Below, in pieces: positions 4,329 to 63,183 of a stretch of DNA of 64,000 bases. The translations under genes and the position numbers were made by a program. The number at the start of each line of letters is the position of its first letter. The first letter of the stretch is position 1. The notes beneath the pieces are model-generated. The model did not search any database. It saw only the letters and a list, made by a program, of their open reading frames with translations, and was not told the DNA's origin. The stretch covers positions 1 through 64,000 of IMG/VR virus record IMGVR_UViG_3300036944_001324; one strand, 5' to 3'.

Positions 4329-5960
4329 ATGAAACAATCTGTGCTCTCGTCTCTGGGTCTGACTCATGTAGTCACCGAGAGCGAACAAGTCTTGGCTGCG
4401 CCCGTCAGCCAGATCCCCACTCCTATCGAAGTGACACCTGAGATCATCGAAGAAGTCGCTAAGGTGGCTCACGAAGCCAACCGCGGCATCAGTGAAGGCA
4501 CGCCTTTGTCGTGGGATGACAGTACCGACGAGATTCGCCAAAGCGCCATCGATGGCGTGCAAGCGATCGTCAACGATCCGACCATGACGCCTGAGAAGTC
4601 GCACAACAACTGGATGCGCTGGAAGGAGTCGAATGGCTGGGTCTTTGGTGAAGTCAAAGACGAAGAAGCCAAGACCCATCCCTGCATGGTTCCATACAAC
4701 GAACTGCCTGAAGACGAACGCGTCAAAGACCAAGTGTTCGTGGACACCGTCAAATCGGAGCTGATGAAGTACAAAGCTTCCGATGTCAGCGAAAACGACA
4801 TTCCTTCCCCGATCAACGAACAAGCAGTTCCATCGGAGAGCGATATCGATGAAACCACGATGGCGCTGGAAACACTCCTGGCGGCAGCTGACTTGCTGGA
4901 AAATACGCCTGACGAAGGCATGAACTCCACCAATGCCGAACTGGTGGAGACGATGCTTGCTACTGCTGTTGGTCCTCTGCAAGCCAGCTATGCGGTGCCT
5001 TCAGCCGAGTCGTACAAACACGGCAAGGTAGCGTCGCTCAAGAGCTTCGCCAAAGAAGGCATCATGGAACGCGCCACCGCCATCGTTGCCAAGCTGATGG
5101 AAATGGTCAAACGCATCGTTGCGTTCGTTACCGTCTGGGTGAAAGCTGCATTCAACGAACTCGAACGCGCCAAGGCTTATCTGCTGTACGTGCGTCGTCA
5201 GATCCAGAAATACCGCAACACCAACAAAACTGGTCCGGTTCTGACTACTGAGCGGATGCGTGGCATGACAGCTCCTTCCAACCAATCTGTCAAGGTTGGA
5301 TCTGACTTGGCGAGCAACGCCATCACGATGCTCGGTGAGATGTCCACGCGTTTCGTTACGCTGTCTCGTTTCGCTGGCTCCATGTTCAAAGAAACCGCGG
5401 ACAGCGTTACGGGTGAGTTCAAAGGTTCACACCTGATCAACAACATCTACACCGCTTTGGACAGCCTGGGAGGAACCCTTCACCAGTCCGGTACCAAGGC
5501 TTTCATTCTCTCGTCGAGTGGCTTGGGATGGCGTGAAGGAGGGTTGGTTGCGCAAGGTCAATCCGTACCAGTTGACGTTACGGATATCTACTTCCTGTCA
5601 GGTCAGATCGCGGGTTACCAAGCGCAGACCGAAATCACTGGCCTGTCGTTCTCCGACGCTGACCGTTTCCTGTCACAGTTCGGTCAGATCGTGTCCGTGA
5701 TTGAAACCCACCTGCGAACCATCTCGCAGTATGCTGCTTCTCTGTCCAAGGTCCAGACCATCTTGGAATCCGTGCAGCGCGCCGGTAGCTCGGAGCAACA
5801 TGGCGCCGCTCGCAACAAAGCCAAGTTGCGTGAAATCCGCATGACACTCAAGATGGGTCGCGCTTTGGCCAAAGCTGCGATGCACGTCAAGAGTACGACG
5901 ACTGACGCCATGATTGGCGCGGTTTCTCTGGTCAATCAGTCATCCAAGAACTGGTCGTAA
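4329..5960 (+). CDS. phiKZ-type internal head protein with N-terminal RyR-like domain
   Basis: HNNWMRWK..NGWVFGEVKD...KTHPCMVPYNELP..ERVKD; LLENT and SAE site followed by the WV..F amphipathic helix seen in the other head paralogs. Confidence 0.7.
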   Translation: MKQSVLSSLGLTHVVTESEQVLAAPVSQIPTPIEVTPEIIEEVAKVAHEANRGISEGTPLSWDDSTDEIRQSAIDGVQAIVNDPTMTPEKSHNNWMRWKESNGWVFGEVKDEEAKTHPCMVPYNELPEDERVKDQVFVDTVKSELMKYKASDVSENDIPSPINEQAVPSESDIDETTMALETLLAAADLLENTPDEGMNSTNAELVETMLATAVGPLQASYAVPSAESYKHGKVASLKSFAKEGIMERATAIVAKLMEMVKRIVAFVTVWVKAAFNELERAKAYLLYVRRQIQKYRNTNKTGPVLTTERMRGMTAPSNQSVKVGSDLASNAITMLGEMSTRFVTLSRFAGSMFKETADSVTGEFKGSHLINNIYTALDSLGGTLHQSGTKAFILSSSGLGWREGGLVAQGQSVPVDVTDIYFLSGQIAGYQAQTEITGLSFSDADRFLSQFGQIVSVIETHLRTISQYAASLSKVQTILESVQRAGSSEQHGAARNKAKLREIRMTLKMGRALAKAAMHVKSTTTDAMIGAVSLVNQSSKNWS

Positions 5961-5966
5961 TTCTCT

Positions 5967-6010
5967 GAACCAATCCCGTTCTCACGAGCGGGGTTCCTCT
6001 TTTTCTTTTT
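5967..6010 (+). terminator. Intrinsic terminator
   Basis: CCCGTTC-TCAC-GAGCGGG stem followed by a T-rich tract. Confidence 0.55.
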
Positions 6011-6024
6011 CGGATATTCTAATC

Positions 6025-7335
6025 ATGAGCATTTTTCGTAAACTGGGTCTGGAAAGCACAGTAATTCCTGAAGAAGGTTTGCCCGTTCAAACACCGACAC
6101 CTGAACAAACTCCGGAGCCAACTCAGGCACCTGCTCCCGCCCCAACAGTAACCGGCAATGTTGATGGTGGCGACAGCGGTGTCAACCTCGAGTCCGACGC
6201 TGAAAGCATGCAGCTCGAAGCTGAAGCCGAAACCATGGAAGGCGAAGGCAATGACATCGGTCTGGCAGGCGCTGACATCTCCAAAGCCCTGATCACGCTG
6301 GAGAACATCTCCACCATCTTGGCCAAAGCCCCGGATGAAGAGATCAACGAAACCACTGCAGCGATCGTTGACGCCGCCATCCAGGACATCAACAGCCGCT
6401 TCGACATCGAGAACGCCAAGGAAATCTCGATCGAGTTCTTCCAAGTGCAGGGCGCCAAACAGTACCGCCATAGCGCTAACGAGGCGATCAACGAACGCCT
6501 GGAACAACTCAAGAAAGCAGCCTACGCCGTGGTCGAGAAGATCATCGGTTGGATCAAGCAGTTCTGGAGCTGGCTGACCGCCACCCACAAGAGCACCAAG
6601 AAGAAGTTGGAAGCCGCCATCGCCGCTGCCAAGAACATCACTGTGGATGCCACCGTCACTTTGCCGAAGTACCAAGCAGACCGTCTGGCTTCTGGCGACC
6701 TGGTCGCTTCGACGGTGATCAACAACGGCCGCACGCTCGAAGCAGTGTGCCACAGCTCGACTTTGTTCATCAAGAACGCTTTCCCGAAAGTGATCGGCGC
6801 GCAAATCGCTTTTGTTCTGCGTGAAGAAGGTGTGCATCTGGCCAAGATGTGCTTTGGTAACTTCAAGTCGGCAGGTGACGCGTACGTTCTGTACAGCGGT
6901 ATCGCCGGCCGTCACGTGGAAGTGGACTTCAGTGGCGATGATCCACGCAGTGCCTTCAAGGTGAACGTCTCCAAGGTCTCTTCGGAACGCGGTAGCAACG
7001 AACTGACACTGAAGGAACATGACGTTGACGTGCTGTGTCAGCAGGCTACCCGCACGCTGCAAGCCAGCACGCTTGGCTACGACGAGTGCATGTCCATGAT
7101 TCGCAAGCTCGAAGCATGGCGTGGTTCGGTTGGCGCTGCTGTGGGTGGTCTCGTGTCTCAACGCATCGCTCTCTTGAATAACTACTCTGCAGCGGTGTCC
7201 ACCCTGAGCTCTGTAGGCTACACCGAAGCGCTGCGTTACGCCGATGCAGTGGTTGGCGTTTTGAACGCATACACGAAGGCAGCCAAGCCTGGTAACGATC
7301 TGACCCCCAACACCAACACCCCCCTTCTCAACTAA
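6025..7335 (+). CDS. phiKZ-type internal head protein paralog (start revised from 5914 to MSIFRKLGLES)
   Basis: GLE, NLE, SIE cleavage-type motifs; Pro/Thr-rich acidic N-terminus; IIGWIKQFWSW helix. Confidence 0.7.
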   Translation: MSIFRKLGLESTVIPEEGLPVQTPTPEQTPEPTQAPAPAPTVTGNVDGGDSGVNLESDAESMQLEAEAETMEGEGNDIGLAGADISKALITLENISTILAKAPDEEINETTAAIVDAAIQDINSRFDIENAKEISIEFFQVQGAKQYRHSANEAINERLEQLKKAAYAVVEKIIGWIKQFWSWLTATHKSTKKKLEAAIAAAKNITVDATVTLPKYQADRLASGDLVASTVINNGRTLEAVCHSSTLFIKNAFPKVIGAQIAFVLREEGVHLAKMCFGNFKSAGDAYVLYSGIAGRHVEVDFSGDDPRSAFKVNVSKVSSERGSNELTLKEHDVDVLCQQATRTLQASTLGYDECMSMIRKLEAWRGSVGAAVGGLVSQRIALLNNYSAAVSTLSSVGYTEALRYADAVVGVLNAYTKAAKPGNDLTPNTNTPLLN

Positions 7336-7345
7336 TCATTGAGCC

Positions 7346-7390
7346 GACGGCATAAGAAGGAAGCTTACGGGCTTCCTTCTTTTATGCTGC
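7346..7390. terminator. Conserved-flank palindrome
   Basis: GACGGCATAAGAAGGAAGC-ttacgg-GCTTCCTTCTTTTATGCTGC. Confidence 0.8.
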
Positions 7391-15603: not shown

Positions 15604-16176
15604 ATGTTCGACATCCTTGCTCAACAATTGGTAGCCGGCCGTCCGTTCACTTCGTACATCTACAGCGAAGACTCCGATTACAAACCTGTCGCTCCTTCCA
15701 ACATCAAAAAGAACATACCGATCCAGATCCGTGATATGGAAACAGGGGTGGTGACCAATCACGACACTATCGTTTCGGCACTGGACGTCTATCCTGATCT
15801 TTACATCAAGGCACTTCACTCATTGCTGCGAGATCGCCGCAATACCTGGAAGAACCTGCAGGCCAGACCAGCTTCAGATACCAGTCACTGGCATGACCAT
15901 AAGGAAAAATACTTAGGCAAGTCTGCTAAACGTGCAAGACCGTACGTGATTTACGCGCAGCACAAGGGGACAGGAGAAGTCAAGCTCGGTCTGCGTCCCG
16001 AGATTGCCAGGCTCATGAAACTGAGCACGACAACTATTTTCCAGTTGTGCACAGAGCGTTCCCCAGGAAAAGACACTTACGTCTGGAGTGTTCGTTACGC
16101 AACGCAAGAGGATCTTGCCAAAGACACTACCTTCCGCTACATCCCGACGTGCATGAGTTTCTACGAACCGAGTTGA
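15604..16176 (+). CDS. NUMOD1/HTH-like repeat protein paralog
   Basis: IQIRDMETGV and AQHKGTGEV repeats; C-terminal SVRYATQEDL versus SIRKASQEDV in the paralog. Confidence 0.55.
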   Translation: MFDILAQQLVAGRPFTSYIYSEDSDYKPVAPSNIKKNIPIQIRDMETGVVTNHDTIVSALDVYPDLYIKALHSLLRDRRNTWKNLQARPASDTSHWHDHKEKYLGKSAKRARPYVIYAQHKGTGEVKLGLRPEIARLMKLSTTTIFQLCTERSPGKDTYVWSVRYATQEDLAKDTTFRYIPTCMSFYEPS

Positions 16177-16230
16177 CGACATAAAAGACCTACCCGGACC
16201 ATCTAAGGCTCGGGTAGGTCTTTATGCCGT
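16175..16230. terminator. Conserved-flank palindrome between convergent genes
   Basis: GACGACATAAAAGACCTACCCG-loop-CGGGTAGGTCTTTATGCCGT. Confidence 0.8.
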
Positions 16231-16238
16231 TTAGGCGT

Positions 16239-18959
16239 TTAATTCATGTCAGGGAACGAGAGGTCAATGCCTCCAAGGTCATCCCCACTTCCACCGCCGA
16301 GATCCCCACCGCCGTCGCCGGTAGACGTGTCAGACCCATCGGAGTCAGACGAGGTTGAACTATCACTACTTCCACCCATACCGGACTCTTCTGATTTCAG
16401 AGCGTTGATTTCAGTGTCAGTAGCTGCAGCAACGGGCGTTGTCTTTTCCAAAATACCCAAGATGCTCTTGGCCACCAGCTCGGTGTGTTGCGAGATGTCT
16501 GCCTTGATGTCAAATGCTGGTCGGCCTTCTTCACCAATCGTGATCATTTCAAACAACTCAGGCGTGATGCCGTTAGCCGACAACCACCGGCGCATGTAAG
16601 ATGCCTTGGTAGCACCTTTGAGTGCGTCCAGACGCTGGGCCGCAGCTTCACCGATGATGGATGCGTCCAGGGTGTCTGTAGAGATGAAGTAGTTGATGAC
16701 CTTGTCGTACAGCTGTTCGTGGGTATCAACTGCTTCCAGTTGAACCTGCATGGATTTCACGTCAGGTTTAGCGAGGCTCGCTGTGAAGTTCGACAAGAAC
16801 TCCATGGTCAGCATGTGAATGAGCAACGGCACATTGTCCTTGAGAGTTTGAATCTCTTCGGGCAAGTTATCTTGCTCTGTAATCAACTTGATGTTTTCCT
16901 CGATCACCTTCTTGATTTCAATCACGAAGGTACCATCAGAAGAAACCAGCTGACGGCTGAATTGCGTGATGAGAGGTTCGAACTTATCCTGGATAGTCCG
17001 AATGCGCTTGGCAAGAAGCAAGTGCGAAGAAGCAGAGATGGATGCGAACTCAGGACGAGCTGCATCATCAATGAGTTCAGGAGGAACACCTACGCCACCG
17101 AGAATACGCTTGCGCAGATCTTCATCGAGTGTTTCATCGAACGGTTGGTGTGTAGTGTTGGATTCGCTGAAGTCTACCTTGGTATCTGGCAGACCTGGGT
17201 TACCACTCGTGCGAAACTCCAGACCCATGGTCTGGACCTGGTTGAGAACGTCCGAAGGGTTGAGCGAACTCGCAGGGGAGATGTGTTGTGTGGCACGAAC
17301 CACTTCCGCGATCACCTGGTCACGGGTTGCTTGTGGATCTGGATCGTCTTCATCGATAGTCACATCGACGATGCGCCGACCAATTGCGTTCTTCACGGCA
17401 CCCATCACCCGAACGAACAGAATCTGAGCACGCATGGCGCCAAGAATACGGGTATCGTCCAACAGGCTCTTACCAGTACCGTCGTCGTTGTACTGGTACG
17501 CGAAATACGTCATCATCTCACGAGGAATGAACAACACCTGCGTGTTTTGTTTTGACAATGTCCGCGCCAGCATCAGGCGGTAGATTTCCTGATTGCTAGA
17601 GATGGTCACTTCGTTACCGAATACGCCGTTGCGCAAACGAGCCAGTAGATCAGCTTCTACCAAGTCCGCGTAAATACGCGAAGCCTGAGCGAACGTCACA
17701 TCGTCGCAACTACCGCCAAAAGCCTGGCTGGCTTTTTGCAACAAGAAGCTACTCATGTCGCCATTGGTCCCGCTGCCTGCGTTTTTACCAAAGTTACGCA
17801 TGCTGTCAAAATGGCTCTTGTGGTTCTTGCGGGATAATGGATTACCCTCGCTATCCAAGACCACGTAGTAACCCACGGGGTCTTCAGGACGACCAGGCGG
17901 GAAAGCAGGAATGACGCTTTCACTGGGTAGATGCAGGATCAATGGCTCGCCCACGGTGTAGCGCTTGATCTCGTTGCCAGTCTTTACCTTGACCAGCGGT
18001 ACATGTTTGCGACGGGTGTTGCGATAGAGCAATGAAGTCAACTCGCGATCGTTCATCTTCTTATTCATCAACCCGGGCGTCTGGTTTTTGGAAGACTCGA
18101 AGTTCTCCAAACCAAACCGCTTACCGTTCAACGTGATCTGAAGTTCTTCCCGCTGACGATCGATGATCTTGGGAAGTTTCAGTGCGTCTGGATTATCGGT
18201 AACCGTAAGACCGGGTACTTCAATCCCAACTGCCTCGTTGACAAACACAACCTTGCTAGGAGTCTGAAGCTTCGCATCGAAGCGCTCAGAAGCAACGAAG
18301 TTCTCTACGGAGAAGTTAACCGACTCCCCAGGTTTTTGCAAGCCCTTACCCAGATACCCAACGGGCTTGAACCGACCGTTAGGCTCCATGTGGGCACTGA
18401 GACTTTCTCGCGAGATGGAAGTGTCCCCGTTAATCAGGTCATCCACTGAGCTTTCAGGGATAACAGCCACGGCGTAAGAGCCAGATCCAAACAAAGCCTG
18501 CTTGAATACTTCCGGCATCTTGCCAAGAAGGTTGTACTTCTCAGACAGGTACGCTTTGACCATCGGGATCAGCGTAGCTTGCAATGGCTGGACGTGCAGA
18601 CCATCGTTAATTCCGAAGGACAGCTCTTCCGTGAACATGTCGTTGGGTGACATGATGGATGCGACCATAATTTCGCATGCCAGCTTCAGCTCGGGAAAGA
18701 GCTGCATTTGTGTTTCGGCGTCTGAATCCTTTTGAGAAACACTGGCCGAAATGTTCTGCAGCTCGGCCTGCAAAGGCACCTCTGGTGTGCGACGACCTTT
18801 GCTGTCGTGCATCGGTGGTCGCACCGCAGACTGCAGCTTTGTTATCTGCGCAACCAGACCTGGATTGGTGCGTGTCAAACTGAGTATGGCAGACTGCTCA
18901 CTCGATTGACGCGCCTGCACCAGATAACTCGCTGGCGACTTGTCATTTGTTGGACTCAT
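16239..18959 (-). CDS. Probable portal protein (phiKZ gp129-like)
   Basis: 906 aa; RKRILGGVGVPPELID...LAKRIRTIQDKF resembles the T4-type portal C-terminal motif; SRE, SVE and GLE processing motifs; Ser/Gly/Asp tail. Confidence 0.65.
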   Translation of the reverse strand: MSPTNDKSPASYLVQARQSSEQSAILSLTRTNPGLVAQITKLQSAVRPPMHDSKGRRTPEVPLQAELQNISASVSQKDSDAETQMQLFPELKLACEIMVASIMSPNDMFTEELSFGINDGLHVQPLQATLIPMVKAYLSEKYNLLGKMPEVFKQALFGSGSYAVAVIPESSVDDLINGDTSISRESLSAHMEPNGRFKPVGYLGKGLQKPGESVNFSVENFVASERFDAKLQTPSKVVFVNEAVGIEVPGLTVTDNPDALKLPKIIDRQREELQITLNGKRFGLENFESSKNQTPGLMNKKMNDRELTSLLYRNTRRKHVPLVKVKTGNEIKRYTVGEPLILHLPSESVIPAFPPGRPEDPVGYYVVLDSEGNPLSRKNHKSHFDSMRNFGKNAGSGTNGDMSSFLLQKASQAFGGSCDDVTFAQASRIYADLVEADLLARLRNGVFGNEVTISSNQEIYRLMLARTLSKQNTQVLFIPREMMTYFAYQYNDDGTGKSLLDDTRILGAMRAQILFVRVMGAVKNAIGRRIVDVTIDEDDPDPQATRDQVIAEVVRATQHISPASSLNPSDVLNQVQTMGLEFRTSGNPGLPDTKVDFSESNTTHQPFDETLDEDLRKRILGGVGVPPELIDDAARPEFASISASSHLLLAKRIRTIQDKFEPLITQFSRQLVSSDGTFVIEIKKVIEENIKLITEQDNLPEEIQTLKDNVPLLIHMLTMEFLSNFTASLAKPDVKSMQVQLEAVDTHEQLYDKVINYFISTDTLDASIIGEAAAQRLDALKGATKASYMRRWLSANGITPELFEMITIGEEGRPAFDIKADISQHTELVAKSILGILEKTTPVAAATDTEINALKSEESGMGGSSDSSTSSDSDGSDTSTGDGGGDLGGGSGDDLGGIDLSFPDMN

Positions 18960-19002
18960 CAGTGAAACCTTTTAGAAAATAAACTCGACAGACCTAGCAG
19001 CG

Positions 19003-19038
19003 AACATAAAAAGTCGCTAGGGCGACCATCTATGTTGT
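19003..19038. promoter_or_regulatory. Conserved-flank palindrome between divergent genes
   Basis: AACATAAAAAGTCGC-TAGG-GCGAC-CATC-TATGTTGT. Confidence 0.5.
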
Positions 19039-19096
19039 TTTTGCAATTCAGTCACCAACACAAGGGACCGTCATTATTCCCATGGAGAATTAGCTC

Positions 19097-22000
19097 GTGA
19101 GCATCAATCACCATAAGCTCTATTTGAACAATGTCTTTGCCTTGGCAGGGACTTTGGTCGTTAAATCAAAGTATTCAGCCGAGCGCATTAATAATCGACT
19201 GATCGCTTTGTACGGAGCGTCGGCGGTTGATAGCAATCAACCGGCTACCTGGAAATACTATTTGAACATCTGCGGGAACTACCATCCCACAGACCCACAG
19301 ATCACAATTCGATCTTTGGACACTTTGCAGTACATTGCGTTCACCAAGACCAACTTGATGACCCACACTGCTACGGCCCGTGCTTATCAGTACGGAAGCC
19401 GGTACTATCGTGAGTTGCTCGCACAGTATCCTGACCACGAAAACCTCATCCTTGGGATTCTCTATCCGGCAACTATGAGTCAGGTGCTCGATGCACCTGA
19501 TTTTTCTGTAGTGGCCTATCCCAGTCATTTGGTAGAGTCCAATGAGGAAAGCCTCATTCGGAACATCAACACGTGGCTTGAAAAGTTCTACCACCGATGG
19601 AACGTCAGTGCGTTTCACCTGACTGATGAGCTCTACGGTGCCTCTCTCTTAGGCGTCATGTACAGCCAGCTGGTCCCGCTGATTCTCAGTCTGCGTCAGC
19701 GCGCTTGCAAAACGCCAGAAGTGCACAGCTACCATGTTCGGCAATACCTTGCCTCCCACGGAATGCTGGATGTCTACCTGTCGCAGATGACCCAAAAGCA
19801 AGCACTGTTCTTTTACCGGAACATCAGCTACATCGAACGCCACAGTGGCAAGGTCTCCACCTTCGAATGGCTGACTGAGAAAGTGCTTACAGACCGCGGT
19901 CTGCCGCTCGTAGAATACGAGATGCGGCATGAGACGACCGACATGCCTGAAGAGCTCACACCCAAAGTGGTGTTCTCGACCAACCCACTCAACCGTATCG
20001 GCTCTAAGAGCACGACCGGTATTTCCACGGCAGCCATCATGGCCAAGGAAATCGCAGTTGCTTCTGGGAACTTCGAACGTATCGCTATTTCCTCTGGACC
20101 GACCGAGCGTAATCTTAAATACTCTCTGCAAGGCAAGGTAAAGACCAAGGTTCTTGAATCCTCACTGGTTCAAAACGCCGACAGCAGCACACAGTCCATT
20201 CAAGAGACCGCCTTGTCTCTGTGGGGTTACATGGCAGCCACCGGCAGGTACGCCATCTACACGCGTGTGAAAAACCCGATCACGGGCGAAGAGCTCACGC
20301 TGTCGATGCTCCAGGCTTACCATTACTTCTTTTACGCGTATTGCATGGTGCATGCCCGGCCACTGCAAACAGTCCCGTTGGTTTACGCACAATTCGTTCC
20401 GCGTATTCCGCCACCCACGCTTTCCGAAGTATTGAACAACGTCGACACTGGTTACGTCTCAGAAGACAAGATCATCGAGCTGATGAGTTTGAACACGACG
20501 CTCTCGTCGTTCGTCAACACCGAGATGTTTAAAGAAGGCTGCCAACAAGTCTTCACCAGTATAAATCAGCAAGCCACGCTGGTCGCGCAAGAAGAGCACT
20601 TCTATTCTCGCGGTCTGATGCACGGCGCTTTTGCCAAGCAGTATTCCGATTACCTGCTGACAACCTCAGAAACAGGCGAGGACATTAAGGCGTACTTCTC
20701 GTCCATAGACATCCCGACAACAGGCTTCTCTGATTTGGAATGGCAGCAGATCTACTTGGATCTGTTCCAGGCATGCACAGGCTTTGATATGCAAGCCGCT
20801 ATCCAAACCTCGGACCTGCAAAAAGCGATGGTTCGCTTGATGACCCAACTGTCATCTTACTCCGTTCAGTTCGTTTCTGAGTTGTCAGGAAGTAGCATCC
20901 GAAGCTTGAACTGGGCAGCCATTCGTCTTGGCGATAACTCTGGAGCTTCTCGAAGCTACTTTGAAATCATCACCAACATGCTTGAAGTCTTCAAGCTCAC
21001 AAGTGATGTTCACATGTACGTTCCGGTGCCAGTGCTACCGACGTCCAACGGCTTTTCTTTCAAGTCACCTAACTACTACCTCGGGATGCTAGAGATCCCA
21101 GTGAATGTTAGCTCTGATTCCAACAATAACAATGCCCGCCACGAGGTCATTATCCACGTTGCTGGTGTTGATCTGGACGATCGTTTCGACGCCAACGCAT
21201 CGACAGAAATCCCAAGCTGGGAAGCTTTCCAGACCATGACGGATGCGGAGATCGCGCAGATCCCGGACATCTACACGTGGGAATGCCGTCAACCACCTAT
21301 CGTGCCGACCAAGATCAACATCAACGATGTTGTTCACAATAGCGCATTGTCCAGCTTTACGAAGCTGACCAAACCTTCAGTAATCTTGCCTTCGTGGAAA
21401 GCTTACTGGGGTCCCAAGAACATGCGTTACTTCTCAGACGAAAACTCAGTGATCGTTCTGGAAGGTATTTGGTATTACGGTGGTCAAAACCAAATCGAAT
21501 CGTTCATGCCGACCATCGGTCGCAGTCTGGTAGAAAGTTTCACGTATGCCGGTGGAACTGACATCAATGTGACGATAGGGTACTACGACTACACTGGTGG
21601 ACCACTGAGGACCATCAACTTCGCACCGGGTTCTACCCCTGGTGATATGGACATCGGTGTTATCGGGCAGCTGCCGCAGGCCATTGAACTTGAATTGACT
21701 AACGGAGTTAACATCTTCGAGTCGATTACGTTCAACAACACCAAGGTCGATTACGCAGACATTGTGATGGTACCGTTCCACAACACGTACCAGTTCCAGT
21801 TCACCTACAAGAGTGACGACCACGACGTCGGAACGCTCAGCAACTTCACCAACGTGCCGGTCCTTGCTTTCTACGAGATGGCACCTCGTCTGGTGCTCGC
21901 GCCGTTCCTGTCGCAGTACCAGTCAGTTGATTTGACGTTCTTCACCGGTGACGTTAACGTCTACCATTTGCTGCCTCTCTATCAGCACTTCATTGCGGAT

Positions 22001-22204
22001 GGCCCATCACTTCAAGGTTGGGGCGCTGTCGATTTGGACGTGACCCAAGTTGATCCAGTACCTGCTAACCAACCACCTGTTGATGAAGGTGTGGTCTTCA
22101 CTACGTCGGGACCAGCTGCTATTGATGGCTTCGTCTTTGCATCGCCTGGCCCTGCCGTGATTGATCTGGACTTTGAAGCAACGATGGCTACTTTGCCACC
22201 GTAA
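19097..22204 (+). CDS. Large virion structural protein (baseplate/tail candidate)
   Basis: 1035 aa; WKYYLNICG.YH, HSYH..QYLASHG, ALF.YRNI.YI..H.GK..TF..L-type jumbo-phage motifs; beta-rich C-terminal extension. Confidence 0.65.
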   Translation: MSINHHKLYLNNVFALAGTLVVKSKYSAERINNRLIALYGASAVDSNQPATWKYYLNICGNYHPTDPQITIRSLDTLQYIAFTKTNLMTHTATARAYQYGSRYYRELLAQYPDHENLILGILYPATMSQVLDAPDFSVVAYPSHLVESNEESLIRNINTWLEKFYHRWNVSAFHLTDELYGASLLGVMYSQLVPLILSLRQRACKTPEVHSYHVRQYLASHGMLDVYLSQMTQKQALFFYRNISYIERHSGKVSTFEWLTEKVLTDRGLPLVEYEMRHETTDMPEELTPKVVFSTNPLNRIGSKSTTGISTAAIMAKEIAVASGNFERIAISSGPTERNLKYSLQGKVKTKVLESSLVQNADSSTQSIQETALSLWGYMAATGRYAIYTRVKNPITGEELTLSMLQAYHYFFYAYCMVHARPLQTVPLVYAQFVPRIPPPTLSEVLNNVDTGYVSEDKIIELMSLNTTLSSFVNTEMFKEGCQQVFTSINQQATLVAQEEHFYSRGLMHGAFAKQYSDYLLTTSETGEDIKAYFSSIDIPTTGFSDLEWQQIYLDLFQACTGFDMQAAIQTSDLQKAMVRLMTQLSSYSVQFVSELSGSSIRSLNWAAIRLGDNSGASRSYFEIITNMLEVFKLTSDVHMYVPVPVLPTSNGFSFKSPNYYLGMLEIPVNVSSDSNNNNARHEVIIHVAGVDLDDRFDANASTEIPSWEAFQTMTDAEIAQIPDIYTWECRQPPIVPTKININDVVHNSALSSFTKLTKPSVILPSWKAYWGPKNMRYFSDENSVIVLEGIWYYGGQNQIESFMPTIGRSLVESFTYAGGTDINVTIGYYDYTGGPLRTINFAPGSTPGDMDIGVIGQLPQAIELELTNGVNIFESITFNNTKVDYADIVMVPFHNTYQFQFTYKSDDHDVGTLSNFTNVPVLAFYEMAPRLVLAPFLSQYQSVDLTFFTGDVNVYHLLPLYQHFIADGPSLQGWGAVDLDVTQVDPVPANQPPVDEGVVFTTSGPAAIDGFVFASPGPAVIDLDFEATMATLPP

Positions 22205-22364
22205 AAAACAACACTCACTATTCGAACAGGTGAAAATCCTGTAGCTAAATCGCACGCTCCTTAATCTTCGCCAGAAAGAGGGGTGTGCGTTATCGGTTTC
22301 ATCAACTCTTTTTCAAGAAAGGCGACATCCGTTAAAATACGGATGGTCCTTTACAGAAACAATC

Positions 22365-23210
22365 ATGGAAATTTTTCGTCGAACACTCTACGGTGGTGGG
22401 GCGCAAGTCGCGCAGCTTCTGCAGATCCCTCTGCCAATTTTGGTGAACTCCACACTCAACGAACGCCTGGGCATTCAGCAGGCTGCAACGTTGGGTCCTA
22501 CCGAACGTCCGGCGTTGCGTTACTTCACGCTCGGCATCGGTGGTCACGGCGCAACCACCGGTGTTGGGAATCTCCCACTCATCCAGTCGCTGCAGCACTC
22601 GTCCAGTCACTCGGGCCACTATCGCCAACTCCCGTTCGTGATGCGTACCGTTGGCAACGACATCACGGCCATCGAACGCGAGCGTTACGCCCTGCGCCGT
22701 ATCGAGACGATTGGCGGCGTTGACTACATCGTCTACTACGCTCGCCGTATCGACACCTCTGGTGCGCAGATCAAGTTCCAACGCCGCACAGTCGTGGGTT
22801 CAGTCACGACCGTTGAAGACTTCGTTCCAAGCGCTGCCGATCTGAACCCAGATCCACCAGACCTCAGCAACGGCGGTGTCAACACCACCGACGGCGTCTT
22901 CCTGATTGCCAGTTGCAAACTGGAAATCGTTCTGGACAGTTTCGACATCACTGAAATCCTGAACGCCGCCATCATCCTGTACAACTCCGAAGACTACGCC
23001 TTCGTCTCGGAAATCGGCCTGGTGACTGGCGTTGACCGTATGGTCCCGACCAATGACGGTGCAGGCGGCAGCTTCTCGTTCAACGAAGCGGTGTGCGCTC
23101 AGATCTTCACCCATGTGAACGCAATGCAGCCTCTCAAGAGTCAGCGTGACGGTCTCACCCTGACCTATGACGTAGGCACCAACGAGCCTTTGTTCGCTCT
23201 TCAGCCGTAA
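22365..23210 (+). CDS. Virion structural protein
   Basis: YF.LGIGGH, LPFV.R...DI...ER..YALR, YYARRI, EIGLV.G.D; strong codon bias. Confidence 0.65.
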   Translation: MEIFRRTLYGGGAQVAQLLQIPLPILVNSTLNERLGIQQAATLGPTERPALRYFTLGIGGHGATTGVGNLPLIQSLQHSSSHSGHYRQLPFVMRTVGNDITAIERERYALRRIETIGGVDYIVYYARRIDTSGAQIKFQRRTVVGSVTTVEDFVPSAADLNPDPPDLSNGGVNTTDGVFLIASCKLEIVLDSFDITEILNAAIILYNSEDYAFVSEIGLVTGVDRMVPTNDGAGGSFSFNEAVCAQIFTHVNAMQPLKSQRDGLTLTYDVGTNEPLFALQP

Positions 23211-30907: not shown

Positions 30908-32050
30908 TCAGGCTTCCAGGGGTGCCCCCATAGCCCAACTATCCAATACTTCTCGGGCACGATCGCTATCGTTAATGATAGACGCGTAGTACTCTTTTGT
31001 GACCCACCATTCAAGCTCGCGGGTCTGAGGGTCAATGCGTGGGTAGGCACGGCAGTTAAACACTGCCATTTCTTCACGGGATATCTTGGCCATCGATTGC
31101 TCTCGAGTCACCTCGGTACGCATAGACGGATGGAAAGCACCCACCACACGGTTAAAGGACCACACCAAAATTTCATCATCCACGATCGAGCCATTGGCTT
31201 GAAACTGGATCTGAACTTTAGCGCTAGCATCGTTGTAGGGCTTCTCGATGTTGTAGTCAAACTGCGCGCCCCGTGGCACACTCAGCGGGAAAGCAGCACC
31301 ACACGCCCAGATACCAACCACGGTCGTACGGCTCGGGTCAAGGATCAACCGATAGACCCGCGTCTGGTAATCGATCAGGTTGGCGATCATCATGTCGGTG
31401 TACGGAACAAGCAGTCCTTCGAACACATGACCCATGTAATGGACCCAGTAATCGAACAGCTTTGTGATAGGGTCCCCCCTGCTATTGCGAAAAGTGGCGG
31501 TGATATTGTATGCGGAATAATTTATCGCAGTACCATCAACCATCGTGTGTTGTTCGCGGTACTGGCCCTGCGGGGAATCATAAATCGGGATGAGCGTATC
31601 TGGAACGCCAGAGAAGCTTTCGATGTGATTGCTGAGCAGCGGTATGAACGCGTTCAAGGGATCGATCAGCGGGCAATTGAGCCCCATCGATGTACCGGTG
31701 ACATCAGTGGATTCCTGACCGAACACTTGAAGACGAGGGTCCAGCATACAGCGCACTGCGCGGTGTACACTCTTTTCTTCCGTGGTCAGCAGCGGGTAAT
31801 ACCGCCGCACGTTCTTCAGATTAGCGCTTTGCAGGTTCAGCAAAGGGCGTGTAAAAAAGACCATCCCGTAATGGTCTTTGTTCATCGGCACAGGCAGAGG
31901 AGTCTGCATGTGGTTAATACCGAAGAAGCTATTGGTAACCGGATTACCAAAGCTGCTCGGAATTTCTTCACCTCGTCCTGCATTCATGGACGGAGCGGAA
32001 GCAAACCCTAGACGACGAAGGTCTTCGATTGAAATATTATCAGAGGCCAT
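30908..32050 (-). CDS. Virion structural protein (phiKZ gp88-like by synteny)
   Basis: HYGMVFFTRP.LNL, FIPLLSN, SG.PD, IDYQTRVYRLILD. Confidence 0.65.
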   Translation of the reverse strand: MASDNISIEDLRRLGFASAPSMNAGRGEEIPSSFGNPVTNSFFGINHMQTPLPVPMNKDHYGMVFFTRPLLNLQSANLKNVRRYYPLLTTEEKSVHRAVRCMLDPRLQVFGQESTDVTGTSMGLNCPLIDPLNAFIPLLSNHIESFSGVPDTLIPIYDSPQGQYREQHTMVDGTAINYSAYNITATFRNSRGDPITKLFDYWVHYMGHVFEGLLVPYTDMMIANLIDYQTRVYRLILDPSRTTVVGIWACGAAFPLSVPRGAQFDYNIEKPYNDASAKVQIQFQANGSIVDDEILVWSFNRVVGAFHPSMRTEVTREQSMAKISREEMAVFNCRAYPRIDPQTRELEWWVTKEYYASIINDSDRAREVLDSWAMGAPLEA

Positions 32051-32146
32051 AAAACGTTTTCTTCCCAATCAAATGGAACTTTTCAGTACTGCCAAAAAGC
32101 AGCAAACTCGATTGACACCCAACCAGATTGACTTGACCCACAGATA

Positions 32147-32198
32147 GACTGCATAAGAGCAAAGCTGCGTCACAAGTACGCGCTTTGCTCTTGACAGT
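32147..32198. promoter_or_regulatory. Conserved-flank palindrome between divergent genes
   Basis: GACTGCATAAGAGCAAAGC-loop-GCTTTGCTCTT. Confidence 0.5.
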
Positions 32199-32272
32199 TT
32201 ACCTGTGAGGATAGCGTAGACTTTTTTGATTTCCCACATCCCTACTTTTTCATAGCAACGAGGATTCTTTTA

Positions 32273-61405: not shown

Positions 61406-62941
61406 TTAGATTCCGAAGTCAGCGAAGCTGGTATCGTTGACCACACTGATCATCTCGCCACCGACCTTCAGTCGCGTGGTATCGGGTTTATCAATATCGT
61501 CAGGGATGATACCACCAGCTACGAACTTCAAAACGAAGTAAAGATGCTCAAGTGGTGTTTGTTGGATCTTGCGGTGTTTACCACGCTGGATAGCGAGGTA
61601 AGCATTACCCTTGCTGTCCTTCTCGATGTTGATGAAAAGCTCCCCATCGATAACCTGACCCAGTTGTTTCGTACCGGAGTAGTAACCACCACCCACCAAG
61701 TCTTTAACGAGGTTGGCAGAACCTTCACGTACCTTGGATTTGATGTCAGGAGACAGCTGGTGCGGTGTGATCATAGTGATGCCGCGTGACGCCATGAACG
61801 CCTTGATGCGTTCGTACATGTTGCGAATATCAACACCGGCCGGACCCTGATCGCAACCAGTGGTAGGAATCTTGAGCAAGTAATCCAAAGCACAAAGACG
61901 AACTTCGTAACCTTGGGCTTCGAGCTTGATGATCTCGTTGCAGATGTCCTTGTAAGTCCACATCGATGGATTGACTTCGTACAAGAAGATGTTCCAGCCT
62001 CGAGCTGTAAGCTTCTCGTAAACGTACTTGGCCACTTCATCGGCCGTAGCTTCGATGTTGGTGAGCAATTCACCAGTTTCGTTCTCATACAAAGACTTGT
62101 ACAGGAACTGCATGTTGGAAGTTAGTGCGTCTTCAAACGAGAACCGAACCAACGCCGGCTTCTTGTCCTTGTTACGCAGGCAGACAGCATCGTTCCAGAT
62201 GGCAACCTGCTTGAAGATGCTCAAAGAGAACCCAGTTTTCCAATTGTGTTCCTGCGCACCAATCACCCATTGTTCACCAGGGCGAAACCCCATGTCCAGT
62301 GCACGGTTCAAACCCTGCCAACCAGTCATCAGGATGGCCGTACCGTTTTCTTGTTCTTGGATCTGGCGGATGATCTCAGCTGAAGCATGCAAGTCAGCCA
62401 GATTGAGCATAGCGTTAATGGCCGGGTCCTTAGACTCAACGTTAACTTGGTAAGGCTCGAGTTTACTCACCAACTCACTGATCCATTGGCGAGTGTTAGT
62501 AATGCTGTCGCGTTCTTGACGGAACGAGAAAGCAGCCTTGTTCAGCAGAGCATCAACTTCCTGATTGCGAAAGTGAGCACTGATGTTCTTTTGCAGATTG
62601 ATTACAGCCAGTTCGATGGCCGGTTGATCAAGGTCTTTATTCAGTACCTGCTCTGCACCAGAGTACAAACCATCGTCACCATGGCAAGCGTGACGCATAG
62701 ACAGCAACAAACTGTCCTTGTCGTATTGGTGAGTAACTGGGTTCTCAGCCATCTCCATGGCGATCTTCTTGAGAGCCGAGAGAACTTCACGTTCTTGACT
62801 CACCCCGATGATAATCTCGGGAACCACTACCGCCTTGATCAACTTGCGGACCAGCTCCGCAGAGTTCTCTGATTTTTCTTTCAGTTGGCTTTCACGAAAA
62901 AGCAAGGCGATAGCCTTGATGAGAAGCAGCTTATAGTCCAT
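61406..62941 (-). CDS. dnaB: DnaB-like replicative helicase (phiKZ gp118-like; start revised to MDYKLLL)
   Basis: TGWQGLNRAL..GFRPGE, variant Walker A GAQEHNWKT, FSFED, Walker B LDYL, ITPHQLS, QRGKHR. Confidence 0.85.
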   Translation of the reverse strand: MDYKLLLIKAIALLFRESQLKEKSENSAELVRKLIKAVVVPEIIIGVSQEREVLSALKKIAMEMAENPVTHQYDKDSLLLSMRHACHGDDGLYSGAEQVLNKDLDQPAIELAVINLQKNISAHFRNQEVDALLNKAAFSFRQERDSITNTRQWISELVSKLEPYQVNVESKDPAINAMLNLADLHASAEIIRQIQEQENGTAILMTGWQGLNRALDMGFRPGEQWVIGAQEHNWKTGFSLSIFKQVAIWNDAVCLRNKDKKPALVRFSFEDALTSNMQFLYKSLYENETGELLTNIEATADEVAKYVYEKLTARGWNIFLYEVNPSMWTYKDICNEIIKLEAQGYEVRLCALDYLLKIPTTGCDQGPAGVDIRNMYERIKAFMASRGITMITPHQLSPDIKSKVREGSANLVKDLVGGGYYSGTKQLGQVIDGELFINIEKDSKGNAYLAIQRGKHRKIQQTPLEHLYFVLKFVAGGIIPDDIDKPDTTRLKVGGEMISVVNDTSFADFGI

Positions 62942-63183
62942 GGGTATTGTTAAAGTCGTTTCGTCAGAGGGAAATGAAGCAAGAACTTTTCGATTGTAAC
63001 CACAACCCAAGTCCTGCTCTACACAGAGATAAACGACGCTGTGCAAAAGACTACCGGACCAATTAATATGTACTGAGATTGCTGCTTTTTGGCTAACCTC
63101 TTTTTGATGTGACGGTGGATTCCGGGCACAAAAGGACGTAACTATGCGCTTAATCTCTATGACTGCACAAGCAGACCACTATT

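What the first reader, a model, noticed from the sequence alone, without database searches (positions are those of the whole stretch)
19003..19038. Palindrome copy between DIVERGENT genes (portal vs large virion gene)
AACATA-AAAAGTCGC-TAGG-GCGAC-CATC-TATGTT lies between the start of the minus-strand portal (18959) and the start of the plus-strand 19097 gene. No transcript needs terminating here, yet TATG points outward on both strands toward two late structural genes. This is the best internal evidence that the motif has a promoter or regulatory role.
Basis: partly seen in the sequence, partly recalled or inferred. Interest (0 to 1): 0.65.

Follow-up and report, generated by a model that had tools for sequence, protein, structure and literature searches.

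The report
Back-to-back late promoters in jumbo phage
The palindrome is a worn-down copy of a terminator-type repeat known from phiKZ-like giant phages, and its two outward TATG boxes most likely act as late promoters for the portal gene and a head gene, which fits known biology and is only mildly new.

Summary
The sequence is real. AACATAAAAAGTCGCTAGGGCGACCATCTATGTT lies at 19003-19036, in the 137-nt gap between the portal gene (16239-18959, minus; phiKZ gp129 homologue) and a head-protein gene (19097-22204, plus; phiKZ gp128 homologue). The window is the start of a 271.6-kb phiKZ-like (Chimalliviridae) phage.

The palindrome belongs to a family of over 100 copies: a GC-rich hairpin followed by (T)TTATGYYGT, often on both sides. 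This matches the conserved terminator motif mapped at transcript 3' ends in phiKZ (hairpin + TTATKYYGT). Its flank contains TATG, the phiKZ late-promoter core, where transcription starts at the G.

Across the genome the family behaves like a terminator. Copies sit just after stop codons, are dense between convergent genes and are rare between divergent ones.

The focal copy is the exception:
- It is the only two-sided copy in a true divergent gap.
- It has the weakest hairpin of the two-sided copies (5 bp).
- Its two TATG boxes and their flanks are invariant in four relatives, while the neighbouring spacers vary and one relative breaks the stem.

Best reading (confidence about 0.55): two back-to-back late promoters, starting at G19034 (+) and at 19005 (-). 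No start site could be mapped.

The parts
19003..19036 (.). The 34-nt palindrome: AACATA / AAAA / GTCGC / TAGG / GCGAC / CATC / TATGTT. It is a minimal two-sided copy of the hairpin + TTATGYYGT family.
   Evidence: Among 51 intergenic CATA..TATG pairs it has the shortest spacer of the structured ones (22 nt) and the weakest inner hairpin (-6.8 / -7.9 kcal/mol, against -13 to -29 for about 44 family copies).
19031..19040 (+). Plus-strand late-promoter core TATG (19031-19034) with a family-type downstream flank, TATGTTGTTT. The predicted +1 is G19034, giving a 63-nt leader to the GTG at 19097.
   Evidence: Its weight-matrix score is at the 34th percentile of the family and the 94.7th percentile of hairpin-less TATGs. 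Its downstream-only score (5.6) is above the family median (5.0). Relatives read TATGCTGT, which is closer to the consensus. The rule that G is +1 comes from phiKZ.
19000..19013 (-). Minus-strand late-promoter core. It reads CTTTTTATGTTCGC on the minus strand, with TATG at 19008-19005. The predicted +1 is 19005, giving a 46-nt leader to the portal ATG at 18959.
   Evidence: All 14 nt (GCGAACATAAAAAG on +) are invariant in five genomes. The score is at the 22nd percentile of the family, with a good T-run and a poor downstream part.
19013..19026 (.). Inner 5-bp stem GTCGC/GCGAC with loop TAGG. It occupies -8 to -21 relative to both predicted start sites.
   Evidence: Relative L006 has a T-to-C change in the left arm and a longer loop, which breaks the stem. 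No compensatory change was seen.
18960..19096 (.). The divergent intergenic region. It has a conserved 52-nt core block (about 18998-19049) flanked by variable spacers, and then conserved ribosome-binding and start regions.
   Evidence: Alignment A1 of the window with L003, L004, L006 and L007.
16239..18959 (-). Portal gene (phiKZ gp129 homologue), the presumed target of the minus-strand promoter.
19097..22204 (+). Head/virion protein gene (phiKZ gp128 homologue, phrog_3222), the presumed target of the plus-strand promoter.
16180..16226 (.). A typical full family copy, for comparison: a two-sided hairpin + TTATGCCGT at the convergent 3' end of the portal gene.
   Evidence: -32.4 kcal/mol, z -6.2. 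Orthologous copies in L003, L004, L006 and L007 have different stems and conserved flanks.

Best explanation
The palindrome is a degenerate two-sided member of the hairpin + (T)TTATGYYGT family, which phiKZ-like phages use as their conserved terminator module. The 3' flank of that module carries TATG, the late-promoter core of the phage's non-virion RNA polymerase. Nothing obvious needs terminating at this divergent junction. The hairpin has shrunk to 5 bp, and what selection keeps are the two outward TATG boxes with their immediate flanks.

These boxes most likely act as two back-to-back late promoters. [quoted passage not shown] It would start at G19034 on the plus strand for the gp128-like head gene (63-nt leader) and at 19005 on the minus strand for the portal gene (46-nt leader). 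The two start sites are only 29 bp apart, so the upstream contacts of each polymerase (about -18 to -23 in phiKZ) fall on the other promoter's core. The two promoters probably cannot be occupied at the same time.

Shown here: the sequence, its family membership, gene identities, conservation, and presence of the polymerase subunit. Inferred: that transcription starts at these two G residues, that the genes are late, and the mutual exclusion.
For: 1. TATG with G as +1 is necessary for phiKZ nvRNAP late transcription in vitro and in vivo (PMC4666361). gp123 binds it on the non-template strand (PMC12809450).
2. This genome has a gp123 homologue (67782-69446, E 1.8e-60). Ten of 16 pocket residues are identical, including F151, H185, H331 and Y406, in a protein only 28% identical overall.
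3. The flanking genes are homologues of phiKZ gp129 and gp128. The divergent pairing is conserved in phiKZ and in all nine relatives fetched. Each gene therefore needs its own promoter.
4. The gap has only one TATG per strand. TATG is rare locally: 6 in 3.3 kb against 15.7 expected.
5. In alignment A1 a 52-nt block around the element is conserved, while the spacers beside it and the portal N-terminal codons vary. Both TATGs and their flanks are invariant. The stem is broken in L006.
6. It is the only two-sided copy in a genuine divergent gap, because the other two apparent cases were gene-calling errors. It also has the weakest hairpin of all structured two-sided copies.
7. Late-type TATGs occur without hairpins. 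The gap 63047-63183 is the positional counterpart of phiKZ P119L (helicase minus / small ORF / major capsid). It has three plus-strand TATGs, none on the minus strand and no hairpin. phiKZ P119L itself has no hairpin.
8. TATG is depleted about two-fold inside genes on the antisense strand as well as the sense strand. The Markov obs/exp on the antisense strand is 0.47, the lowest of 256 tetramers; codon-shuffle ratios are 0.50 and 0.51. This is expected for a DNA-level start signal.
Against: - No transcript ends were available. The public runs that hold this phage are kept only as contigs. One 217-nt contig from an RNA library spans the whole gap (18914-19130). That is not expected if all RNA starts at the two TATGs, although the contig may derive from DNA.
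- TATG is necessary but not sufficient in phiKZ.
- The family is terminator-like in its placement, and in phiKZ it is terminator-like by experiment.
- The minus-strand half has a poor downstream flank. On that strand the element folds into a stable hairpin plus U-run.
- The four relatives that conserve the element are close (portal 71-76% identical). At 59% identity, L009 keeps only the portal-side TATG and L008 has neither. More distant relatives and phiKZ have gaps of only 35-62 nt with no such element.
- A second divergent gap (32069-32272) keeps a strong hairpin next to its TATG. The argument that the hairpin decays where it is not needed is therefore not general.
Confidence: 0.55

Rival explanations
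1. The element is what the rest of the family is: a terminator. Here it would work as a weak bidirectional insulator, or as a 5'-leader attenuator of the portal mRNA. A minus-strand transcript starting further upstream (the next TATG is at 19115) would form the 14-pair hairpin and stop at the U-run, which would tune portal expression.
For: - The family motif equals the phiKZ terminator motif mapped at 61 transcript 3' ends.
- 42 phage terminators in that study lie in 5' leaders.
- The minus-strand RNA folds to -17.6 kcal/mol, z -4.5, and no shuffle folds as well.
- The pattern scan calls GGTCGC-CCTA-GCGACT + TTTTATGTTC terminator-like.
- A contig from an RNA library crosses the element.
Against: - The stem is by far the weakest of the two-sided copies, and it is broken in L006 while the flanks stay invariant.
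- On the plus strand the fold is no better than shuffles (z -1.7), and no T-run follows the stem.
- No co-directional gene ends nearby on either strand.
Confidence: 0.2
2. The element is a functionless relic: a family copy that landed or arose in this gap in the ancestor of this small clade and has not yet decayed. Its apparent conservation would reflect the short evolutionary distance.
For: - The element is confined to the window's clade. Relatives with portal identity of about 40% and phiKZ have gaps of 35-62 nt without it. L008 has no TATG at all and L009 only one.
- Reverse-only family copies with no obvious role exist elsewhere in the genome.
Against: - The spacers beside the block and the portal's first codons have diverged a good deal in the same five genomes, while 14 + 7 + about 20 nt of the element are invariant.
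- TATG is otherwise strongly avoided in this genome, so two neutral TATGs facing two late genes would be unusual.
Confidence: 0.12
3. The palindrome is an operator. A dimeric DNA-binding regulator would bind the inverted half-sites AACATA / TATGTT and co-regulate the two divergent genes.
For: It has perfect two-fold symmetry of outer arms and stem, a central position between two divergent genes, and a conserved block.
Against: - In the family the distance between the half-sites varies from 22 to 45 nt, and the spacer is always self-complementary but variable in sequence. This fits single-strand folding plus strand-specific reading, not a dimer on duplex DNA.
- One-sided copies are common.
- No candidate regulator was identified.
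Confidence: 0.06

Closest known systems
phiKZ late promoter (5'-TATG-3', G = +1), read by the non-virion RNA polymerase. Yakunina et al. 2015, PMC4666361; structure PMC12809450.
   Same: A TATG core sits on the coding strand 46 and 63 nt upstream of two homologues of late virion genes. The phage encodes the gp123-like subunit with most of the TATG pocket conserved.
   Different: - The two cores are arranged back to back, 29 bp apart, around a small hairpin.
- The plus-strand core carries the extended TATGYYGTYT flank, which in this genome goes with terminator hairpins. phiKZ late promoters showed no conservation outside TATG.
- Start sites are not mapped here.
phiKZ conserved terminator motif 5'-BCCYCCCCHWWDGGGRRGGBYTTATKYYGT-3' (61 termination sites by ONT-cappable-seq, Putzeys et al. 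2024, PMC10914365), and motif A of phage 201phi2-1 (PMC11512511).
   Same: The genome-wide family here is a GC-rich hairpin followed directly by (T)TTATGYYGT. The focal copy has CTATGTTGT on + and TTATGTTCG on -. phiKZ itself uses TATGTTGT after its hairpins.
   Different: - The focal copy is not behind any gene's 3' end.
- Its stem is 5 bp, against 9-13 bp in the family.
- On the plus strand the stem is 4 nt away from the TATG.
- The hairpin sequences differ from phiKZ's CCYCCCC type.
Bidirectional intrinsic terminators between convergent genes (six reported in phiKZ, PMC10914365).
   Same: Two-fold symmetry, with an A-rich 5' arm and a T-rich 3' arm around one hairpin. Many two-sided family copies in this genome lie in convergent gaps.
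   Different: The focal copy lies between gene starts, not gene ends.
PeSL cassettes (early promoter plus stem-loop) of T4-type phages.
   Same: A repeated intergenic module that pairs a stem-loop with a phage promoter and is scattered through a large phage genome.
   Different: A different polymerase, a different promoter and a different order of parts. It is an analogy only, and no test was run.
AR9 late promoter AACA-(6N)-T-A/G (PMC5312081).
   Same: Both strands of the element begin with AACA.
   Different: The 11th and 12th bases are GT on both strands, not T-A/G. AR9 recognition needs uracil DNA and a different pocket. Not a match.

Membership tests
phiKZ-type late promoter (nvRNAP, TATG) | 5'-TATG-3' on the non-template strand upstream of the gene | tested here: met
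   One TATG per strand in the gap: 19031-19034 (+) and 19008-19005 (-). Both point at the adjacent gene.
phiKZ-type late promoter (nvRNAP, TATG) | The phage encodes the non-virion RNA polymerase subunit that binds TATG (gp123) with its pocket intact | tested here: met
   Homologue at G000 67782-69446, E 1.8e-60. S144, F151, R156, K158, H185, N186, H331, S334, S402 and Y406 are identical. K190, S330, N398, Y399 and Q466 differ, as does R155, which contacts DNA through its backbone (pairwise alignment at 28% identity).
phiKZ-type late promoter (nvRNAP, TATG) | Drives late (virion) genes | tested here: inconclusive
   The genes are homologues of phiKZ gp128 and gp129 virion proteins. Their timing in this phage was not measured.
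phiKZ-type late promoter (nvRNAP, TATG) | Primary transcripts start at the G of TATG | not testable with these tools
   The runs that hold the phage are kept only as contigs, which show no ends and no strand.
Chimalliviridae conserved terminator motif (hairpin + TTATKYYGT) | TTATKYYGT directly 3' of the hairpin | tested here: inconclusive
   The plus strand reads CTATGTTGT (8 of 9) but lies 4 nt from the stem. The minus strand reads TTATGTTCG (7 of 9) and follows a T-run that abuts the stem. Weight-matrix scores are at the 34th and 22nd percentile of 108 family copies.
Chimalliviridae conserved terminator motif (hairpin + TTATKYYGT) | Stable GC-rich stem-loop | tested here: not met
   The stem is only 5 bp and the inner hairpin is -6.8 / -7.9 kcal/mol, against -13 to -29 for the family. 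The plus-strand fold has z -1.7. The stem is broken in L006.
Chimalliviridae conserved terminator motif (hairpin + TTATKYYGT) | Lies downstream of a gene's 3' end, where transcripts end | tested here: not met
   It lies between two gene starts. Family hairpins typically begin 2-60 nt after a stop codon.
Chimalliviridae conserved terminator motif (hairpin + TTATKYYGT) | Transcript 3' ends map to it | not testable with these tools
   No raw strand-specific reads were available.
Sigma-70 host promoter | -35 / -10 hexamers with 16-18 nt spacing | tested here: not met
   No site in 18700-19400.
Known structured RNA family (Rfam) | Match to a covariance model | tested here: not met
   No match at E up to 1 in 18500-19600.

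The most novel reading that the evidence does not exclude
The hairpin + TTATGYYGT module may be a dual-use signal read by one pocket of the phage polymerase. The polymerase's sigma-like and promoter-reading parts are permanent subunits, so an elongating enzyme would meet TATG on the non-template strand again. Just behind a nascent hairpin this would make it pause and release, giving termination. On naked DNA the same box would fix the start site, giving a late promoter.

This would explain four things:
- why the terminator flank equals the promoter core from phiKZ to this distant phage;
- why TATG is avoided about two-fold on both strands inside genes;
- why copies are symmetric regardless of gene direction;
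- why a copy that has lost its hairpin can survive as a pure double promoter at the portal / gp128 junction.
Probability: 0.2. Interest if true: 0.7.

Novelty: new member of a known kind. Interest (0 to 1): 0.35.

Why it matters
The result gives two precise, testable start sites for two core virion genes of an uncultivated phiKZ-like phage. It also shows that the phiKZ regulatory signals (the TATG late promoter and the hairpin + TTATKYYGT terminator) extend to a lineage whose portal is only 27% identical to phiKZ's.

The broader point is that the terminator flank and the late-promoter core are the same four bases. This one copy, where the hairpin is nearly gone but both TATG boxes are kept, is a natural separation-of-function case. 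If start sites do map to terminator-flank TATGs, many intergenic regions in these phages would be combined stop-and-restart modules. That would change how operons are drawn in jumbo phages and how their parts are reused in engineering.

Tried and rejected
- Megablast of 16000-22500 against the phage collection found no match.
- A scan of IMG/VR with the portal protein found no relative. Relatives were reached instead through the protein word search and contig look-ups; one look-up returned no DNA.
- The public run search found only wastewater runs kept as contigs. Laying four of them gave no ends, strand or joints, so they say nothing about start sites or 3' ends. One 217-nt contig from an RNA library crosses the gap.
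- Supplementary start-site and terminator tables for phiKZ and 201phi2-1 are not held, and Ceyssens et al. 2014 is not held. I therefore could not check whether mapped phiKZ late start sites coincide with terminator-flank TATGs.
- There was no Rfam match and no sigma-70 promoter match.
- The AR9-type late promoter AACA-N6-T-A/G does not match on either strand.
- Two length-greedy gene callers gave noisy strand assignments and were not used for statistics. The codon-score caller that was used mis-called two genes: 5914-7335(+) is the real gene (internal head protein), and 182190-184412(+) is open. These errors had created two false divergent gaps. The counts by gap type are therefore approximate.
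- I considered that the conserved 5' arm merely lengthens the RNA stem. That is unlikely to be the whole story. The two arms often do not pair with each other (TATGCCGT opposite ACAGCATA gives an A-C mismatch), while each arm stays close to the consensus. Copies with only the 5' arm also exist.
- I considered that the hairpin decays wherever no terminator is needed. The strong one-sided copy in the divergent gap 32069-32272 weakens this.

Full report
**What the window is.** The window is the first 64 kb of a 271,654-bp virus record that is 99% complete by the record's estimate. It belongs to a phiKZ-like, nucleus-forming type of jumbo phage.
- The 906-aa ORF at 16239-18959 (minus) matches phrog_3004 (E 4e-191). 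It is 27% identical to the phiKZ portal gp129 (E 2e-98).
- Its best cultured relatives are jumbo phages of Burkholderia, Ralstonia, Xanthomonas, Erwinia and Pseudomonas, at 28-35% identity.
- The 1035-aa ORF at 19097-22204 (plus) matches phrog_3222. It is 30% identical over 641 aa to the phiKZ head protein gp128 (E 3e-99).
- gp128 and gp129 are also divergent neighbours in phiKZ, 35 bp apart. The same is true in every relative I fetched.

**The observation.** The sequence is present as described, at 19003-19036 rather than ending at 19038.
- It has 6-nt outer arms (AACATA / TATGTT) and a 5-bp inner stem (GTCGC / GCGAC, loop TAGG) on the same axis. Non-pairing 4-nt spacers separate arms and stem on the plus strand.
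- Both parts are rarer than chance: 1 found against 0.01 expected, and 1 against 0.09.
- It sits in a 137-nt gap between the two gene starts. It supplies the only TATG on each strand of that gap, and both point outward.

**The family.** Listing the intergenic regions showed what 'copy' means. Many gaps hold a GC-rich hairpin of variable sequence flanked by conserved arms...ACRRCATAA on the 5' side and (T)TTATGYYGT on the 3' side.
- TATGC[CT]GT occurs 72 times in the genome, 65 of them in the 14% of the genome that is intergenic.
- 108 intergenic TATGs have a perfect stem of at least 6 bp ending right before them. Their consensus is TTTATG-Y-Y-G-T-Y-T, with G at +4 in 81% and T at +5 in 65%.
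- About 44 copies are two-sided (CATA-hairpin-TATG), with inner hairpins of -13 to -29 kcal/mol.
- Orthologous copies at the portal 3' end in four relatives have different, co-varying stems and conserved flanks.

**What is already known about this motif.** It is not new.
- In phiKZ, long-read mapping of transcript ends found a conserved terminator motif at 61 termination sites: 5'-BCCYCCCCHWWDGGGRRGGBYTTATKYYGT-3', that is, a hairpin followed by TTATKYYGT (PMC10914365).
- Phage 201phi2-1 has a similar motif at 59 sites. Adding a second motif there lengthens the stem and strengthens termination (PMC11512511).
- In a 35-kb stretch of phiKZ I found the same layout, with TATGTTGT after hairpins behind the capsid gene, in front of the tail-sheath gene and at the portal 3' end.
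- Separately, the phiKZ late promoter is 5'-TATG-3', with the G as the start site. It is necessary but not sufficient, and downstream sequence matters (PMC4666361).
- The beta-like subunit gp123 of the non-virion RNA polymerase binds that TATG on the non-template strand (PMC12809450).
- The terminator flank therefore contains the late-promoter core. The papers I could read treat the two motifs separately.

**How the family behaves in this genome.** Its placement is that of a terminator.
- Hairpins begin a few to a few tens of nt after a stop codon, while the distance to the next start codon varies widely.
- With the codon-score gene set, 20 convergent gaps (1,973 nt) hold 20 hairpin-linked TATGs. 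The 20 'divergent' gaps (4,280 nt) hold 5.
- Four of those five disappear on inspection. The ORFs 5914-7335(+) (internal head protein) and 182190-184412(+) are the real genes, so those two gaps are co-directional.
- In co-directional gaps the hairpin-linked TATG points backwards as often as forwards (40 against 34).
- Outward TATGs on both sides are thus a general property of the element and are not particular to the focal site.
- The gene calls are heuristic and these counts are approximate. Two alternative callers were worse.

**Why the focal copy is different.**
- It is the only two-sided copy in a genuine divergent gap. Among structured two-sided copies it has the shortest spacer (22 nt) and by far the weakest hairpin (-6.8 / -7.9 kcal/mol).
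- As RNA, the plus strand folds no better than shuffled sequence (-13.1 kcal/mol, z -1.7). The minus strand folds better (-17.6, z -4.5), thanks to G-U pairs, and ends in a U-run. Typical family copies reach -25 to -32.
- The plus-side flank TATGTTGTTT is a good family flank. Its downstream score of 5.6 is above the family median of 5.0. The minus-side flank is poor downstream of TATG.

**Conservation.** Four relatives with portal proteins 71-76% identical (L003, L004, L006, L007) keep the element. Alignment A1 shows four things:
- The first codons of the portal gene vary a good deal.
- Two spacer stretches in the gap vary (columns 91-99 and 152-180).
- A 52-nt block is conserved: CAGCGAACATAAAAAG-YCGC-loop-GCGACCAYCTATGYTGTTTWTGCAATT.
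- Both TATGs and their flanks are invariant. The loop varies, and in L006 a T-to-C change breaks the stem with no compensating change.

The relatives read TATGCTGT, which is closer to the consensus. At 59% portal identity, L009 keeps a TATG 42 nt before the portal ATG but none for the other gene, and L008 has none. At about 40% identity, and in phiKZ, the gap is only 35-62 nt and has no such element. The element is therefore a feature of this small clade.

**Support for TATG as a promoter in this phage.**
- The genome encodes a gp123 homologue (67782-69446, E 1.8e-60).
- In a pairwise alignment at 28% identity, 10 of the 16 residues listed as forming the TATG pocket are identical. These include F151, which stacks on G+1, and H185, H331 and Y406, which sandwich T-3 and A-2.
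- The gap 63047-63183 lies between the helicase (gp118 homologue) and the operon that holds the major capsid gene (gp120 homologue). It is the positional counterpart of phiKZ promoter P119L. It has three plus-strand TATGs, none on the minus strand and no hairpin. P119L itself has no hairpin.
- Inside genes TATG is depleted on both strands. With a second-order Markov expectation the ratio is 0.65 on the sense strand and 0.47 on the antisense strand, the latter being the lowest of all 256 tetramers.
- With synonymous-codon shuffles the ratios are 0.50 and 0.51.
- Avoidance on the strand that is not transcribed fits a start signal read on DNA. General TpA avoidance may contribute to it.

**Most likely mechanism.** The two TATG boxes are back-to-back late promoters.
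- By the phiKZ rule, transcription would start at G19034 on the plus strand, giving a 63-nt leader.
- On the minus strand it would start at 19005, giving a 46-nt leader.
- The small stem occupies -8 to -21 of both promoters.
- The two start sites are 29 bp apart, so each polymerase's upstream contacts (about -18 to -23 in phiKZ) fall on the other core. I infer that the two promoters compete. None of this is measured.

**What could not be done.** The only public runs that hold this phage are wastewater libraries kept as assembled contigs, which cannot show starts, ends or strand. One short contig from an RNA library crosses the whole gap. That is a small point against exclusive initiation at the two boxes, if the contig derives from RNA at all.

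**Rivals.**
- A weak terminator or leader attenuator, mainly for minus-strand transcripts that start at 19115.
- A functionless relic of a family copy.
- An operator for a dimeric regulator, which the variable half-site spacing across the family makes unlikely.

**Open puzzles** that none of these readings explains:
- Reverse-only copies right behind plus-strand genes.
- The strong one-sided copy in the divergent gap 32069-32272, upstream of a structural-like gene.

**Verdict.** The promoter reading is plausible for this copy (about 0.55) and rests on well-established phiKZ biology. The claim that this copy shows a promoter role for the motif family is only partly supported, because the family is a known terminator module. 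The finding is a new member of a known kind and of modest interest. The more interesting possibility is that one polymerase pocket reads TATG both to start and to stop transcription. That is compatible with the data and untested.

Noticed in passing
whole genome G000 (window included): TATG is depleted about two-fold inside genes on both strands. Sense obs/exp is 0.65 and antisense 0.47 (the lowest of 256 tetramers) under a Markov expectation; the ratios are 0.50 and 0.51 against synonymous-codon shuffles. Locally there are 6 TATGs in 17400-20700 against 15.7 expected.
   Followed up: partly
window 53233, 57161, 60121 (+); also G000 217746: A small repeat, T-run ... GGCGATATATA(C/G)(C/T)AGTTGTGAGAT, lies just upstream of small plus-strand ORFs in the 48-61 kb block. 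It looks like an AT-rich early (virion polymerase) promoter of the phiKZ type.
   Followed up: no
window 63047-63183: This divergent gap lies between the DnaB-like helicase (gp118 homologue, 61406-63046 minus) and the operon with the major capsid gene (63894-66116). It is the positional counterpart of phiKZ promoter P119L. It has three plus-strand TATGs (63067, 63143, 63158), none on the minus strand and no hairpin.
   Followed up: partly
window 32069-32272 (hairpin about 32157-32192): This second divergent gap holds a one-sided family copy. It has a 10-bp stem with a 16-nt loop, followed on the minus strand by CTTATGCAGTC, 84 nt upstream of gene 30908-32068 (phrog_3196, weak match to a virion structural protein). 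It keeps a strong hairpin where nothing obvious needs terminating.
   Followed up: partly
G000 1602, 157885, 220925, 244502, 246750 and others: Eleven hairpins right after the stop of a plus-strand gene carry only the 5' arm (RRCATAA) and no TTATG on the 3' side. That is, the motif points backwards into the gene just finished. Overall, reverse copies are as frequent as forward ones in co-directional gaps.
   Followed up: no
window 5914-7335 (+) versus 6019-7161 (-): A long antisense ORF out-scored the real gene in my codon-score caller. The plus ORF matches internal head protein families (phrog_6807, phrog_2497) and is followed 19 nt later by a two-sided family copy at 7351-7386.
   Followed up: yes
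L003, L004 (NCBI metagenome assemblies); L006, L007 (Logan contigs): Two near-complete relatives (contigs of 258 kb and 256 kb) and two fragments share the portal at 71-76% identity, with the same gene order around it. Together with the window they form a small clade with no cultured member in the phage collection.
   Followed up: partly
window 16150-22100: Wastewater libraries from several studies hold this phage. One 10-kb contig covers the whole stretch at 95-99% identity with 94 differences, most of them transitions.
   Followed up: no
L011, L012, L013 and phiKZ L002 15330-15364: In relatives with portals about 40% identical, and in phiKZ, the portal / gp128 gap is only 35-62 nt. The 137-nt gap with the palindrome is therefore an expansion specific to the window's clade.
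   Followed up: partly
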